Shown here piece by piece: positions 1 through 35,600 of a DNA stretch of 64,000 nucleotides. The stretch spans positions 13,578,001 through 13,642,000 of the forward strand of contig NC_043018.1 in NCBI RefSeq assembly GCF_006345805.1. The letters run 5' to 3'. Positions within the stretch are counted from its first letter, which is position 1; every line of letters begins with the position of its first letter. The position numbers and the translations under genes are program-made. The notes under the pieces were generated by a model. It had not been told where the DNA came from. It did no database searches and was given only the letters and a program-made list of their open reading frames with translations. This DNA comes from Octopus sinensis. Taxonomy: Eukaryota.

Positions 1-441
1 GCATGTGCATGCCAGAGATGCCAACCTCATAAAAAAATGATTAGTCAAGATAAATATTCAAGTCAGGAAAATATCTAATATAAGGATCGTTAAGGGAACC
101 AGGTAATGTTTTTCCTTCATTCTCCCCTAAATGATCCCATTGCCCTCCACAAACTAAAATGCAACATCCTACGTCTCCTTAGTGATTATTTCCCGTCCTC
201 ACTTCAGCACATCATCGGTGAAGGCCAAGCTTAGCTGATGAGACTAGAACTGGAACCAAGCTGGAAACGTGTCTAAAATTATCTCCAAGACTTATTGAAA
301 ACAAAAAACAAAAAAAAAATGAAAATAATACTAGTCACTGACTAATATTGTTTTTTTCCTTACTGTAAAATTATTAACTTTTAAAGTTATATTAACTACC
401 TTAATACTATGTTAAATATATTAAACTTGTTTTTTTAGTCT

Positions 442-554
442 GCCCCGGTAGCACAATCGGTTAGCGCGCCGTACTTATAGAGGGTACCTTCCTTGTGTTA
501 ACTCACAAGTCGGGAGATATGCAGAGGTTGTGAGTTCGTGCCTCACCCGGGGCA
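442..554 (+). tRNA. trnI-TAT: tRNA-Ile(TAT) with 39-nt intron (480-518); probably a pseudogene or variant
   Basis: Perfect acceptor stem GCCCCGG/CCGGGGC, A box TAGCACAATCGG, anticodon loop CT-TAT-A, perfect T stem GTGAG/CTCAC, discriminator A. Defects: A12-C23 and C28-A42 mismatches and A58>T in the B box. Confidence 0.85.
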
Positions 555-1139
555 GCGGTATCTCTGGCCGTTGCCAGCGCTGCCCCAACTGGCCTCGTGC
601 CAGTGGCACATAAAAAGCACCCACTACACTCATGGAGTGGTTGGCGTTAGGAAGGGCATCCAGCTGTAGAAACATTGCCAGATCAAACTGGGCCTGGTGC
701 AGCCTCCTGGCTTCCCAGACCCCAGTTGAACTGTCCAATCCGTGCCAGCATGGAGAACGGACGTTAAACGATGATGATGATGATGTTCTGAGACTAATCT
801 TGAATTAGTCCTAAAAAAATCATGAAATGGATTATGTTGATTAGATAAGGTGAAGAGGGAGCAGCAAGCTGATCCTCATACTCTCTCTCTCTCTCTCTTT
901 TTCCTTTCCCAATATTTTTGAGGAATGATTACTAACAATTAATCAACTGAAATACTTAACCTAATTATTTAATCAACCCAGAATTTTGAAATGAAAGTTG
1001 ACACCTACAGGATTTGAACTCTCGATAGAAAGGGTTTTAACTAAATACCACGAAGCATTTCATCAGTTGCTCAACTGATTCTATCAAATTGTCACCATTT
1101 TACCTCACAAAAAGTAACGAAAGAGATAAAAATGTTTAC

Positions 1140-1224
1140 CTGACAATGGTTGAGTGAACACAAAATTCTTTGTCCAGTTGTCCACTGCAAAGGTTAAAAA
1201 TCTGTATAGATCCTGAATTGTTAC
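1140..1224 (-). CDS. WDR11: WDR11 exon 12 (GNNSGSIQIFNLCSGQLDKEFCVHSTIVR); gene continues beyond position 1
   Basis: Matches GTSNGSVLVYHLTSGLLHKELSIHSCEVK. The 12 exons total 1712 nt of open frame. Confidence 0.92.
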
Positions 1225-7163: not shown

Positions 7164-7344
7164 CTGCATAAAAGGTGAACCAGTTCTCTCCATGGGTATA
7201 ATTCCAACAGTTTGGTTGATTTTCAGATCCAGTATGAGAACTTCTCGAGGATAAACGAGTATCAAGTGATGCCGACAGCAATTATGGTAAGCTAATTGCA
7301 GACATTCATTCAAAGTGAAAGGTTCTTCATCATTTAAGTTTGAC
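7164..7344 (-). CDS. WDR11: WDR11 exon 8 (...LNECLQLAYHNCCRHHLILVYPREVLILDLKINQTVG...FMQ)
   Basis: Closely matches NDCLQLAY...YPREILILDLEVNQTVG of WDR11. Confidence 0.96.
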
Positions 7345-18608: not shown

Positions 18609-18863
18609 TAAGGCTTGTGTCCTGCATATGCAGCCCTACAGATTTGGAAGGACACATACAACACTTCATCCTCCACATGCAATTCTCTGGCTACAACCAG
18701 AGGATTAGAATGTACAAATGGGGCCATGGCTAAGTACAAGGCCATCATAGAGGGTGATAGAAATGGGATCTGCTTGCTATACAGGGGTAAATCCTGGAAC
18801 AGTAAAGAAAGGACCAGGAAAAAGATCGATGAAGCCAACTCATGGAATGACAAAAACAATTTA

Positions 18864-19388
18864 GGTGCAGGAGTGGCTGTGTGGTAAGTAGCTTGCTTTA
18901 CGAACCACATGGTTCCGGGTTCAGTCCCACTGCATGGCACCTTGGGCAAGTGTCTTCTACTAATAGCCTTGGGCCGACCAAACCCATGTGAGTGGATTTG
19001 GTAGATGGAAACTGAAAGAAGCCTGTCATATATATGTATATATATATGTGTGTATGTCTGTGTTTGTCCCCCCCCCCAACATCACTTGACAACCGATGCT
19101 GGTATGTTTACATCCCCGTAACTTAGCGGTTCGGCAAAAAGAGACCGATAGAATATAGTACTAGGCTTGCAAAGAATAAGTCCTGGGGTCGATTTGCTCA
19201 ACTAAAGGCGGTGCTCCAGTATGGCTGCATTCTTTCAGTTTCCGTCTACCAAATCCACTCACAAGGCATTGGTCGGCCCGGGGCTTTAGCAGAAGACACT
19301 TGCCCAAGATGCCACGCAGTGGGACTGAACCCAGAACCATGTGGTTGGTTAGCAAGCTACTTACCACACAGCCACTCCTGCGCCTATG
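18864..19388. mobile_element. tRNA-derived SINE family A: + copy followed by an inverted 5' head
   Basis: A box TGGCTGTGTGG, B box GGTTCAGTCCC, ACCTTGGGCAAG core and internal (TA)n(TG)n. Confidence 0.85.
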
Positions 19389-24575: not shown

Positions 24576-25151
24576 CGAAAGATTGCCATATATATATATA
24601 TATATATATACGCATACACACACCAACATACACGAGGTGGTCATGATTGGACTGTCCTAGTTGGCCTACTGGTTTCGTATTGACACCCTTTTTTCAGATC
24701 GATTGTCGAGACAGCAAACATTTCTGCCGTCAGCCGTCTGTAAATAGATCGAAGACATTACCTACATACATACATATATAAACAAAGCGAAGAGGGTTTT
24801 TTTTTTCTTTCTTCCCTTCAGTATTTGCCAAAATCAATCTCCTGAGACACAAAAAAAAAGAATTTCAAGGAATTAGATATCGATGACTAAAAAAAGTGTG
24901 TAGTTTTATGTGGTGATTTGATTTGCTTGAAATAGCAGCCAGATTTGCCGCAAGCCACACACTGACGTCTCGGGAAAAATGGGTGGAGACATTGGTGAAT
25001 GTTGTCCTTTGTAGACTTAGCCTGAAGGAAAGAGAAAATCATAGAATGGACATCGGCTGGAACCACCTTACCGTTAATAACGTCTTCAATTGTGTATTAA
25101 TTACTTCTACAACACCACTATCGTCTGCTATATATATATATATACACAACT

Positions 25152-25206
<55 letters not shown>

Positions 25207-26342
25207 TATCTCATCATCATCGTTTAACGTCCGTTCTCCATGCTAGCATGAGTTGGACGGTTCGACCGGGGATCTGGGAAGCCAGAAGGCTGCACCAGGC
25301 TCCAGTCTTATATATTACACACACACACAACAGTATGTATATATTATATATATATATGTGTGTATGTGTGTGGTAAGTAGCTTGCCACATGCTTCCGGGT
25401 TCACTTCCACTGCGTGGCACCTTGGGCAAGTGTCTTCTACTATAGCCTCAGGCCGACCAAAGCGTTGTGAGTGGATTTGGTAGACGTCCTATATATGTGT
25501 GTATATATATATATGTATGTGCGTGTGTATATGTTTGTGTGTCTGTGATTGTCCCCCCCCCCAACATCTGGTGCGTTTACGTCCCCGTAACTTAGCAGTT
25601 CGGCAAAAGAGACCGATAGAATAAGTACTAGACTTACAAAGAATAAGGCCTGGGGTCGATTTACTCGACTAAAGGCAGTGCTCCAGCATGGCCACAGTCA
25701 AATGACTGAAACAAGTAAAAGAGTAATACAACTGTATATATAATATATATATATATATATATGAGACGAAAGATTGCCATATATATATATATATATATAC
25801 ACGCATACACACACCAACATACACGAGGTGGTCATGATTGGACTGTCCTAGTTGGCCTACTGGTTTCGTATTCACACCCTTTTTTCAGATCGATTGTCGA
25901 GACAGCAAACATTTCTGCCGTCAGCCGTCTGTAAATAGATCGAAGACATTACCTACATACATACATATATAAACAAAGCGAAGAGGGTTTTTTTTTTCTT
26001 TCTTCCCTTCAGTATTTGCCAAAATCAATCTCCTGAGACACAAAAAAAAAGAATTTCAAGGAATTAGATATCGATGACTAAAAAAAGTGTGTAGTTTTAT
26101 GTGGTGATTTGATTTGCTTGAAATAGCAGCCAGATTTGCCGCAAGCCACACACTGACGTCTCGGGAAAAATGGGTGGAGACATTGGTGAATGTTGTCCTT
26201 TGTAGACTTAGCCTGAAGGAAAGAGAAAATCATAGAATGGACATCGGCTGGAACCACCTTACCGTTAATAACGTCTTCAATTGTGTATTAATTACTTCTA
26301 CAACACCACTATCGTCTGCTATATATATATATATACACAACT

Positions 26343-26389
<47 letters not shown>

Positions 26390-26941
26390 ATATATACATA
26401 TATATCTCATCATCATCGTTTAACGTCCGTTCTCCATGCTAGCATGAGTTGGACGGTTCGACCGGGGATCTGGGAAGCCAGAAGGCTGCACCAGGCTCCA
26501 GTCTTATATATTACACACACACACAACAGTATGTATATATTATATATATATATGTGTGTATGTGTGTGGTAAGTAGCTTGCCACATGCTTCCGGGTTCAC
26601 TTCCACTGCGTGGCACCTTGGGCAAGTGTCTTCTACTATAGCCTCAGGCCGACCAAAGCGTTGTGAGTGGATTTGGTAGACGTCCTATATATGTGTGTAT
26701 ATATATATATGTATGTGCGTGTGTATATGTTTGTGTGTCTGTGATTGTCCCCCCCCCCCCCAACATCTGGTGCGTTTACGTCCCCGTAACTTAGCAGTTC
26801 GGCAAAAGAGACCGATAGAATAAGTACTAGACTTACAAAGAATAAGGCCTGGGGTCGATTTACTCGACTAAAGGCAGTGCTCCAGCATGGCCACAGTCAA
26901 ATGACTGAAACAAGTAAAAGAGTAATACAACTGTATATATA

Positions 26942-26972
<31 letters not shown>

Positions 26973-27512
26973 ATATACATATATATCTCATCATCATCGT
27001 TTAACGTCCGTTCTCCATGCTAGCATGAGTTGGACGGTTCGACCGGGGATCTGGGAAGCCAGAAGGCTGCACCAGGCTCCAGTCTTATATATTACACACA
27101 CACACAACAGTATGTATATATTATATATATATATATATGTGTGTATGTGTGTGGTAAGTAGCTTGCCACATGCTTCCGGGTTCACTTCCACTGCGTGGCA
27201 CCTTGGGCAAGTGTCTTCTACTATAGCCTCAGGCCGACCAAAGCGTTGTGAGTGGATTGGTAGACGTCCTATATATGTGTGTATATATATATATGTATGT
27301 GCGTGTGTATATGTTTGTGTGTCTGTGATTGTCCCCCCCCCCCAACATCTGGTGCGTTTACGTCCCCGTAACTTAGCAGTTCGGCAAAAGAGACCGATAG
27401 AATAAGTACTAGACTTACAAAGAATAAGGCCTGGGGTCGATTTACTCGACTAAAGGCAGTGCTCCAGCATGGCCACAGTCAAATGACTGAAACAAGTAAA
27501 AGAGTAATACAA

Positions 27513-27547: not shown

Positions 27548-27959
27548 AATGTGTCTATATATGTATATCATCATCGTTGTCGTTTAACGTCCGCTTTCCA
27601 TGCTGGCATGGGTTGGACGGATTGACTGAAAACTGGTAAACCTGGAGGCTGCACCAGGCTCCCGTCTGATTTGGCAATGTTTCTACACCTAGATGCCCTT
27701 CCTAACGCCAACCACTCTGAGAGTGTAATGGGTGCTTTTATGTGCCACTGGTATGGGAGCCAGTCAGGCTGCACTGGCATCGGTTATGCTCGAATGGTGC
27801 ATTTTACGTGCCACTGGCACAGGTGCCAGCCAGGCAGCAGTGGCATCGATGGGGCTTTTTAAATGCCAGCCAGGTGGCACTGTCATCGTCTATGGTTTCA
27901 TTCGGTTCAGCAGGTCTTCACAGCATATTGTCCAACATTTTTTTTTAACTGGACACTGG

Positions 27960-34212: not shown

Positions 34213-35600
34213 ATCATCATCATCATCATCATTTTTGATCATTTAGTGACTCAGCTATTAGAGCAAGGTCATCAGCATAGAGAAGCTTCCGGGGGCATCC
34301 TGTCTTGAATTTCTCTGTTATTGCCTGAAGGACTGTGATGAATAAGCGGGGGCTGAGGACTGATCCTTGGTAGACCCCTACTCCTACTTGGAATTCTTCA
34401 TTATACTCGTTGCCAACCCTCACCTTACTGACAACATCCCTGTACATGGCTTGTACAGCTCTCACTAACCATTCATCTATCCCTAGTTTCCTTATTAACT
34501 ACCAGATAAGGGATCTGGTGACCCTGCCAAAGGCTTTCTCCATGTCAGCGAAAGCCAGGTACAGAGGTTTATCTTTGGCTAGGTATTTCTCCTGCAGCTG
34601 TCTTCCCAGGAATATAGCATCAGTGGTGCTTTTCCTTGGCACAAATCCAAACTGCATCTCATCTAGACTGATTCTCTCCCTAATTAGTTGGACTATGACC
34701 CTCTCCATGACTTTCATTACCTGATCCAACAGCTTGATACCTCTGTAATTATTTGTATCTAAGGCGTCACCTTTACCTTTGTAGCAGTTGACTACAGTGC
34801 TGCTACACCAGTCATTGGGTATGACTATGTGTCTGCCAGATCGGTAGGGGAATAGGAGACTGGCAGGTTCCGGAAGTTCGTATTACAAATCATAAGATCA
34901 TTTGCATTGCAGAACTCCAGCAGCCTGGTTCCCTCCTCATTGCGGAAACCAAAACCGTAGCCTCCATGTATGCCATGGAAGCCCCCTGCATGTTGTCCAA
35001 CATGCCCATTGAAGTCACCAGCCTCAAAGAGAAGGTCCCTGTCATTTGTCGACAAGGTAGTCTGCAAGAGGGTGTCATAAAATCGATCTTTCCATCCATC
35101 AGGTAGCCCTAGCTGAGGAGAATAAGCCGAGATAATGGTTGCTAACCCATGACGAAGCACTAATCTAATCGTAAGTATTCTATCGCAGACTCTGACTACC
35201 TCGATTGCTTTATCAACCCATTTCTGCGCAAGAAGTATACCCACGCCCCTGACCCCGTCAGTGTTCCCTGCCCAGAAAATCTTATACCTGTGTTGTTTGC
35301 CTGTGAGGAACATAGCAGACCTTCCTCTCCACCTTACTTCTTGGATGCCACACAAATCTACATGTCTCCGTTCAAGCATCTCAACAATTTCACCAGGCCT
35401 ACCTTTCAGTGTGCCCACATTGAGTGTGCCAACCCTCAGGAAGTGGGCAGTGTGGGCCCGTGAGACCCTAGGATGGGGGACAGCAGTGTCATGTACCTGA
35501 AAAGAAAGCTCACATTTGGCAGAACTCATGTACATACAATAGTCTTGAGCCTGCATACACTACACCATCATTTTTATGCGCTACATGATCACTACCTTAC
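34213..35600 (-). mobile_element. RTE-clade LINE, internally deleted (APE endonuclease and RT fragments)
   Basis: LRVGTLNVGTLKG...IQEVRW...GDFNGHVG (APE); QFGFVP..STTDAIF, QGSVLSP, LYADDLAL (RT); frameshifts. Confidence 0.92.

What the first reader, a model, noticed from the sequence alone, without database searches (positions are those of the whole stretch)
442..902. Intron-containing tRNA-Ile(TAT) fused to an RTE LINE tail with no Pol III terminator: a SINE-like chimera
Seen: a nearly canonical tRNA-Ile(TAT) (442-554) retains a 39-nt intron with an internal CTTGTG/CACAAG hairpin and the C32-G516 anticodon-intron pair. After a 10-nt spacer it runs directly into the RTE-type 3' tail (565-785, ending in (GAT)n). 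The first T4+ run is at 898-902. Established: SINEs arise as tRNA Pol III head plus LINE 3' recognition tail, and tRNA genes normally have an oligo-T terminator just downstream. Inference: this is either a single proto-SINE made by a 5'-truncated LINE tail inserting about 10 nt behind a tRNA gene, or a member of an undescribed SINE family that keeps the tRNA intron (mobilised from unspliced pre-tRNA). Three stem/B-box lesions suggest tRNA function has been lost.
Basis: partly seen in the sequence, partly recalled or inferred. Interest (0 to 1): 0.75.

Follow-up and report, generated by a model that had tools for sequence, protein, structure and literature searches.

The report
Decayed tRNA-Ile gene beside LINE fragment
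A lone, mutated, intron-containing isoleucine tRNA gene in an octopus genome has a broken-off tail of a very common jumping gene (a LINE) sitting 10 bases behind it; this looks like an ordinary accident of a repeat-rich genome, not a new family of mobile elements.

Summary
There is a tRNA-Ile(TAT) at 442-554 with a 39-nt intron at the canonical site, two broken stem pairs and T58. A 10-nt spacer follows, then a 221-bp repeat ending in (GAT)5G. No T4 run occurs before 898. The repeat is the 3' UTR of a LINE. One window copy and one independent contig continue upstream into a LINE ORF C-terminus. About 30 other copies (window plus Octopus vulgaris loci) have ragged 5' ends, as expected of 5'-truncated LINEs. 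None of them carries a tRNA, and no other tRNA was found in about 187 kb searched. The RTE clade itself was not verified.

The tRNA looks dead. It has five uncompensated changes at positions identical in mouse and fly (about 7%). That matches the tail's 7-9% divergence from its family consensus. No significant target-site duplication flanks either the tail alone or tRNA plus tail.

Most likely this is a solitary tRNA gene or pseudogene with a truncated LINE inserted behind it, possibly deleting the terminator. A one-step chimeric retrocopy by template switching is not excluded. A SINE family that keeps the intron is unsupported. The genome-wide junction search and the orthologous empty site could not be obtained. 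Interest is low.

The parts
430..436 (+). T7 run 5 nt upstream of the tRNA, in AT-rich single-copy flank
442..479 (+). tRNA-Ile(UAU) 5' exon: acceptor, D arm with an A12.C23 mismatch (A at 453), anticodon stem 5' side, anticodon TAT at 476-478
480..518 (+). 39-nt intron at the canonical 37/38 site; internal CTTGTG (492-497) / CACAAG (504-509) complement; G516 placed to pair with C32 (474)
   Evidence: ARAGORN -i; read
519..554 (+). tRNA 3' exon: anticodon stem 3' side with A42 (523) opposite C28, variable loop AGGTT, T arm GTGAG/CTCAC with T loop TTCGTGC (T58 at 539), acceptor 3' strand, discriminator A
555..564 (+). 10-nt spacer GCGGTATCTC. It has no CCA and no oligo-T, and it resembles nothing in the LINE 3' UTR
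565..621 (+). First (A-type) ~57-nt repeat unit of the LINE 3' UTR; this is the 5' truncation point of this copy
622..769 (+). Unique ~150-nt terminal part of the LINE 3' UTR, 7.2-8.6% diverged from the family consensus
770..785 (+). (GAT)5G microsatellite end of the LINE
786..897 (+). Single-copy 3' flank with no T4 run; ends in (CT)n
898..902 (+). First T run (T5) downstream of the tRNA, 344 nt after its 3' end (123 nt if 565-785 is removed)

Best explanation
This is a solitary nuclear tRNA-Ile(UAU) gene copy lying antisense inside or beside a WDR11-like host gene. It still has the eukaryotic pre-tRNA layout, with the intron at 37/38 and an anticodon-intron pair, but it is no longer under selection. 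A 5'-truncated copy of a very abundant octopus LINE inserted by target-primed reverse transcription 10 nt behind it, in the same orientation. That copy comprises one 3'-UTR repeat unit, the unique tail and (GAT)n. The insertion left no recognisable target-site duplication, so it probably removed a little target DNA, including the oligo-T terminator (inferred). Either that loss or earlier decay made the tRNA a pseudogene. The tRNA and the LINE fragment have since drifted by similar amounts. The composite is a chance juxtaposition. It has the architecture from which SINEs are thought to arise, but there is no sign that it was ever copied.
For: Shown:
- The tRNA call and intron are confirmed.
- The tail is one of at least 10 copies in the window and about 23 in 81 kb of O. 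vulgaris DNA, at 82-92% identity.
- The copy at 27567-~28200(-) and contig L003 continue upstream into a LINE ORF C-terminus (...GSETW...RLRWYGHV.RMDED...GRPRKTWD.VVKHDLQ.LG...stop), followed by the same repeat units and tail.
- Copy lengths run from 125 to 915 nt with different 5' ends, which is the signature of 5' truncation.
- No other tRNA was found anywhere in the window or in seven further loci.
- Nothing matches 430-564 elsewhere.
- The flanks are single copy.
- Against mouse and fly tRNA-Ile-UAU, which differ from each other at only 3 of 74 positions, the window copy has two compensated acceptor pairs plus 5 uncompensated changes: G9A, G12A, pair 28/42 and A58T. Both stem breaks are CpG-to-CpA type, read from the sequence.
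- The tail is 7.2-8.6% from its consensus, which is comparable to 5/74 = 6.8% for the tRNA.
Inferred: the target deletion and the order of events.
Against: - No TSD for the tail alone (best 4/6; 88% of random placements do as well), so the independent-insertion model needs an atypical integration. Two sister copies show clean 6-9 bp TSDs.
- Even with 565-785 removed, no T4 run lies within 120 nt of the tRNA.
- The tail starts only 10 nt after the tRNA and in the same orientation. That is roughly a 1-in-600 coincidence per tRNA locus at the local density of tails.
- A 7/10 match (TTTTTAGTCT at 432-441, TTCTGAGACT at 786-795) abuts the two outer boundaries exactly. Its nominal P is 0.008, but it was found post hoc.
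Confidence: 0.62

Rival explanations
1. One-step chimeric retrocopy. While copying its own 3' UTR at a target site, the LINE reverse transcriptase switched template to an unspliced, 5'-matured pre-tRNA-Ile(UAU). The tRNA, a short trailer and the LINE tail were then inserted together, in the way U6/L1 and other small-RNA/LINE chimeras form. The tRNA part would have been dead on arrival.
For: - The architecture fits: a full small RNA in sense, then a 5'-truncated LINE 3' part.
- There is no terminator and no TSD for the tail alone.
- A 7/10 direct match abuts G442 and the end of (GAT)n exactly.
- The tRNA part and the tail show similar decay.
- Template switching to small RNAs is the proposed route for SINE module acquisition (PMC4758252).
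- tRNA/L1 chimeras do exist in primates (bioRxiv 10.1101/2025.02.02.635956).
Against: - The junction has neither CCA nor an oligo-U remnant (at most one T).
- The TSD is not significant once registration freedom is allowed (P about 0.36).
- Known tRNA/L1 chimeras are mostly half tRNAs in antisense orientation with 9-19 bp TSDs.
- A 5'-processed, intron-containing, trailer-bearing RNA is a minor species (established pre-tRNA processing knowledge).
Confidence: 0.15
2. Member of an undescribed SINE family whose head is an unspliced tRNA-Ile(UAU) and whose tail is the LINE 3' end.
For: Only the architecture, and the fact that RTE-type LINEs have spawned many SINEs (Malik and Eickbush 1998, as cited in PMC9115989).
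Against: - None of about 30 tail copies has a tRNA head, and no second tRNA was found in about 187 kb searched.
- Nothing matches 430-564.
- No O. vulgaris protein hit extends from the tail into the tRNA part of the junction ORF.
- The genuine tRNA-derived SINE in the same window has about 20 copies with one uniform 5' end, which shows what a family would look like here.
Confidence: 0.04
3. A still-transcribed locus: a working or weakly working Pol III gene whose transcript reads through the LINE tail to T5 at 898-902 (about 460 nt). This would be a live proto-SINE or a source of a novel small RNA.
For: The A box TAGCACAATCGG still fits the consensus, the T stem is intact and the intron geometry is preserved. 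There is a TATA-like AAATATATTAAA at about -30, although the flank is 67% A+T.
Against: - Five uncompensated changes at positions invariant from fly to mouse, including B-box A58 and two stem pairs.
- The MFE fold is not a cloverleaf.
- (GAT)n would lie 113 nt inside the transcript rather than at its end.
- There are no daughter copies.
Confidence: 0.08
4. Assembly artefact: a high-copy LINE tail was wrongly joined to a tRNA locus.
For: The tail is a very abundant repeat.
Against: Both sides of the tail are unique sequence, and the copy has its own private substitutions and its own unit composition. Nothing suggests a collapse. No reads were available.
Confidence: 0.03

Closest known systems
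Eukaryotic nuclear tRNA-Ile(UAU) genes (intron-containing)
   Same: 65 of 74 mature positions are identical to mouse. The D loop, anticodon loop, variable loop and T stem are the same. The intron sits between positions 37 and 38.
   Different: Two broken stem pairs, G9A and A58T. The intron is 39 nt, against about 19 in the mouse construct and 22-26 in fly. There is no oligo-T terminator.
5'-truncated copies of an octopus LINE with a tandem-repeat 3' UTR and (GAT)n end (RTE-like)
   Same: Homology covers one repeat unit, the unique tail and (GAT)n. Divergence is typical of the family.
   Different: No recognisable TSD. It has only the A-type unit and no B-type units.
tRNA-derived SINEs that share a LINE tail (Ohshima and Okada model; octopus OK/OR SINEs)
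   Same: The order of modules is the same: a tRNA-related head followed by a LINE 3' tail.
   Different: Single copy. The head is a complete gene with an intron. No TSD brackets the unit, and no terminator or usable 3' end follows the tail. The true SINE in this window has an intron-less, diverged head and a uniform 5' end.
Small-RNA/LINE chimeric retrocopies (U6/L1 type; tRNA/L1 chimeras)
   Same: A small Pol III RNA in sense orientation is fused to a 5'-truncated LINE 3' part.
   Different: No significant TSD and no oligo-U or CCA at the junction. The intron is retained. Described tRNA/L1 chimeras are mostly antisense half-tRNAs.

Membership tests
Nuclear tRNA-Ile(UAU) gene | Cloverleaf scoring above the family threshold, with anticodon UAU | tested here: met
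   Rfam 39 bits against a gathering score of 29; ARAGORN -i calls tRNA-Ile(tat)
Nuclear tRNA-Ile(UAU) gene | Intron at the canonical 37/38 position with an anticodon-intron pair | tested here: met
   39-nt intron at 480-518; C32 (474) and G516 read
Nuclear tRNA-Ile(UAU) gene | All stems paired and conserved tertiary and B-box bases intact (functional gene) | tested here: not met
   A12.C23, C28.A42, T58 and A9
Nuclear tRNA-Ile(UAU) gene | Oligo-T Pol III terminator shortly downstream | tested here: not met
   The first T4+ run is at 898-902
tRNA-derived SINE | Many dispersed copies sharing the head-body junction | tested here: inconclusive
   None in 64 kb plus 123 kb. The whole genome was not searchable. 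The JGI metagenome scans were empty and uninformative
tRNA-derived SINE | Target-site duplications bracketing the whole unit | tested here: inconclusive
   Only a 7/10 match in strict register. It is not significant once registration freedom is allowed
tRNA-derived SINE | Intact internal A and B boxes | tested here: inconclusive
   The A box fits the consensus. The B box carries A58T. The effect on TFIIIC binding was not measurable here
tRNA-derived SINE | LINE-derived tail at the 3' end of the transcript | tested here: not met
   The tail is present, but no terminator follows (GAT)n. The predicted RNA would run 113 nt further
LINE 3' end (RTE clade claimed) | The sequence is continuous with the 3' end of a LINE ORF in longer copies | tested here: met
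   Window copy 27567-~28200(-) and contig L003
LINE 3' end (RTE clade claimed) | Ragged 5' truncation and a microsatellite 3' end | tested here: met
LINE 3' end (RTE clade claimed) | Reverse transcriptase groups with the RTE clade | not tested
   Only about 130 C-terminal codons were available. The protein search gave one unnamed hit. Microsatellite tails are common in RTE elements (PMC9115989), but that is not diagnostic
Small-RNA/LINE chimeric retrocopy | TSD around the whole chimera, and the small RNA's true 3' end (oligo-U or CCA) at the junction | tested here: not met
   No significant TSD. The junction reads GCA-GCGGTATCTC-TGGCCG, without CCA or a T run
Small-RNA/LINE chimeric retrocopy | The whole unit is absent from the orthologous site in relatives | not testable with these tools
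   No orthologous octopus locus could be retrieved

The most novel reading that the evidence does not exclude
The locus is a single-event chimeric retrocopy. An octopus LINE reverse transcriptase jumped from its own 3' UTR onto an unspliced pre-tRNA-Ile(UAU). That would be the RNA-recombination step proposed for SINE birth, caught with the tRNA intron still in place. It might also be the founder of a small family not sampled here.
Probability: 0.12. Interest if true: 0.6.

Novelty: already known. Interest (0 to 1): 0.2.

Why it matters
If it is what it most likely is, it matters little. It is one more decayed tRNA gene next to LINE debris, in a genome where repeats make up about two thirds of the DNA (PMC13282606). 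Its small value is as a natural example of the raw material from which SINEs are thought to be built: a Pol III head placed in front of a LINE recognition tail. Had the composite been copied, or been made in one step from an unspliced pre-tRNA, it would bear directly on how SINE heads are acquired. That can be settled by a simple genome-wide search and a cross-species comparison.

Tried and rejected
- Exact-protein look-ups of two ORFs over the junction and the 3' flank found nothing on record.
- A protein search with the minus-strand ORF spanning intron, tRNA, spacer and tail gave only 4 O. vulgaris hits, all confined to the tail part. The sample is too thin to be a real family test.
- I tried to reach the orthologous locus through the host gene. 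A WDR11-like exon at 7164-7344(-) was found, but its only database relatives are 58-78% identical and come from distant species. Their loci share no DNA similarity with the window and hold no tRNA.
- A protein search with the decayed LINE C-terminus gave one unnamed hit. It was useful as contig L003 but did not settle the clade.
- The 842-aa O. vulgaris ORF next to a tail copy in L007 is not a LINE ORF.
- JGI metagenome scans for the junction pattern and, as a control, for a conserved tail motif were both empty. That collection holds no octopus DNA, so the result says nothing.
- The full-text search for the tail sequence found no paper.
- The MFE fold of the pre-tRNA is not the cloverleaf, because the intron's CUCACAAG competes for the T-stem strand. 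I did not treat this as evidence either way.
- I rejected the idea that the 221-bp element is itself a SINE with a fixed head, because its 5' ends are ragged.
- I rejected the idea that the spacer is LINE-derived, because it has no similarity to the L003 3' UTR.

Full report
**Observation.**
- Rfam's tRNA model matches 442-554(+) at 39 bits (gathering score 29) over the whole model, with anticodon UAU and a long insertion after position 37.
- The session's ARAGORN tool, which does not allow introns, finds nothing.
- The 5' exon is 442-479, the intron 480-518 and the 3' exon 519-554.
- The intron holds CTTGTG (492-497) and CACAAG (504-509). G516 lies three bases before the 3' splice site, where the anticodon-intron pair with C32 (474) is expected.
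- cmscan flags two non-canonical pairs, A12.C23 (453/465) and C28.A42 (470/523). The T loop reads TTCGTGC, with T at position 58 (539).
- The spacer is 555-564, GCGGTATCTC. The repeat runs 565-785 and ends in (GAT)5G.
- The only T4+ runs nearby are T7 at 430-436 and T5 at 898-902.

**What the 565-785 element is.**
- Self-blastn finds at least 10 copies in the window at 82-92% identity. In several of them the homology starts exactly at 565.
- Reading the copies with their flanks gives the family layout: a variable number (0-4 or more) of ~61-bp tandem units, a ~150-bp unique part, and (GAT)n.
- The copy at 27567-27783(-) continues upstream into a decayed ORF end of the kind found in non-LTR retrotransposons...GSETWVVTAEDV...WYGHVMRMDED...KTWDVVVKHDLQRLGFTEAMTHNQELWR.
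- A protein search with that fragment found one homologue. Its 1.6-kb contig L003 has an intact ORF end, a stop codon, about 190 nt, repeat units, the same unique tail and (GAT)n.
- The tail is therefore the 3' UTR of a LINE.
- Four Octopus vulgaris loci, reached through spurious ORFs in tail copies, add about 23 more copies at the same identity range. That also places the window in Octopus or a close relative.
- Copy lengths range from 125 to 915 nt with different 5' ends, which is the pattern of 5' truncation.
- The RTE clade itself was not verified. Microsatellite ends are common in RTE elements (PMC9115989), but that is not diagnostic.

**Is the tRNA-tail composite a family?**
- No other tRNA is detected in the window, even at E <= 1.
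- None is detected in L001-L007, and ARAGORN with introns finds none across all 187 kb.
- Nothing matches 430-564 elsewhere. The flanks 1-441 and 786-1600 are single copy.
- The O. vulgaris proteins that match the junction-spanning ORF cover only its tail part.
- By contrast, a genuine tRNA-derived SINE is present about 20 times in this window. Every copy starts at the same base, GGCGCAGGAGTGGCTG.... A real family here would be easy to see.
- This sample is small against a genome of gigabase size, so the negative result is suggestive rather than final.

**State of the tRNA.**
- I aligned the mature part to mouse and Drosophila tRNA-Ile-UAU. Those sequences were taken from bioRxiv 10.1101/2025.06.19.660564 and PMC4536317.
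- Mouse and fly differ from each other at 3 of 74 positions. The window copy differs from mouse at 9.
- Four of the nine are two compensated acceptor-stem pairs (3-70 and 6-67), which is the mark of past function.
- Five are uncompensated: G9A, G12A, both members of pair 28/42, and A58T.
- Both stem breaks can be read as single CpG-to-CpA transitions (GCGC to GCAC; TGCGG to TGCAG).
- Depending on the native octopus sequence, that is 3 to 5 lesions in 74 nt (4-7%).
- The tail differs from its family consensus by 11-13 of 152 positions (7.2-8.6%), all transitions.
- The two parts have therefore drifted by similar amounts. The tRNA seems to have lost constraint at about the time the tail arrived, or earlier.

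**How the two came together.**
- No significant target-site duplication brackets the tail alone. The best match is 4 of 6, and 88% of random placements do as well. Nor does one bracket tRNA plus tail (P about 0.36).
- In strict register, the ten bases before G442 and the ten after (GAT)n match at 7 of 10 (nominal P 0.008). I found this after looking, so I count it only as a hint.
- Two sister copies do show clean 6-9 bp duplications.
- With 565-785 removed, the tRNA would still have no T4 run for about 120 nt.
- The simplest account is an ordinary 5'-truncated LINE insertion that deleted a little target DNA, including the terminator.
- The main rival is a one-step chimera made by template switching onto an unspliced pre-tRNA. 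That is the mechanism proposed for SINE module capture (PMC4758252) and it is known for U6/L1 and tRNA/L1 chimeras. Against it, the junction has no CCA and no oligo-U. The described tRNA/L1 chimeras are also mostly antisense half-tRNAs with clear 9-19 bp duplications.

**Context.** The tRNA lies antisense to, and about 6.6 kb downstream of, a minus-strand exon at 7164-7344. That exon has homologues in other animals and a weak WDR11 beta-propeller match. The tRNA is therefore probably intronic. At the local density of same-strand tails (about one per 13 kb), a tail starting within 20 nt behind a given tRNA has a chance of roughly 1 in 600. That is rare per locus but expected several times in a genome that is two-thirds repeats (PMC13282606).

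**What could not be done.** No octopus genome could be searched by DNA. The orthologous locus could not be reached through the host gene. The JGI metagenome scans were empty even for the tail control. No reads or expression data were available.

**Verdict.** The 'SINE-like chimera' reading is not supported. Most likely this is a decayed solitary tRNA-Ile(UAU) gene with a truncated LINE fragment inserted behind it (confidence about 0.6). A single-event chimeric retrocopy remains possible (about 0.15), and a SINE family is unlikely (about 0.04). Interest is low, at 0.2.

Noticed in passing
window 18862-18982(-), 57381-57503(-), 60673-60794(+), 19269-19388(+), 54107-54221(+) and about 15 more; tandem array 44060-44577: An abundant tRNA-derived SINE. 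Every copy starts at GGCGCAGGAGTGGCTGTGTGGTAAG and carries a B-box-like GGTTCCGGGTTCAGTCCC. At 44060-44577 a 129-bp piece of it is repeated four times in tandem at 98-100% identity. The Rfam tRNA model does not detect these heads.
   Followed up: partly
window 7164-7344(-) and 1140-1224(-): A probable host-gene exon (7164-7344) with 58-78% identical homologues in other animals and a weak WDR11 first beta-propeller match. A second candidate exon (1140-1224) has good splice signals but is unverified. The tRNA lies antisense and downstream, so it is probably intronic.
   Followed up: partly
window ~25100-25460, 26291-26657, 26932-27242: A composite block (SINE fragment, partial LINE tail and (TA)n) is present three times at 97-98% identity. 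This looks like a local segmental triplication.
   Followed up: no
window 432-441 and 786-795: TTTTTAGTCT and TTCTGAGACT match at 7 of 10. They abut the tRNA 5' end and the end of (GAT)n exactly. This could be a decayed TSD of a tRNA-plus-tail unit, but it is not significant after allowing for choice of register.
   Followed up: yes
window 34828-35556(-), 45189-45683(+), 58443-58862(-): Fragments of other mobile elements: an AP-endonuclease (LINE) ORF, a MULE transposase domain and a mariner-type transposase piece.
   Followed up: partly
window 51770-53264: A 1.5-kb (CCAT)n microsatellite, about 376 units, which creates long spurious ORFs in several frames.
   Followed up: no
window 501-509 versus 529-535: The intron's CTCACAAG can pair with TTGTGAG of the T-stem 5' strand. 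As a result, the predicted minimum-energy fold of the pre-tRNA is not a cloverleaf.
   Followed up: partly
L006 3679-4596(-): In O. vulgaris, the last ~131 nt of the LINE tail is repeated about six times head to tail with a period of about 137 bp. The tail can evidently seed satellite-like arrays.
   Followed up: no
L007 7027-7103: A mir-9/mir-79 precursor match above the Rfam threshold in one of the O. vulgaris loci.
   Followed up: no
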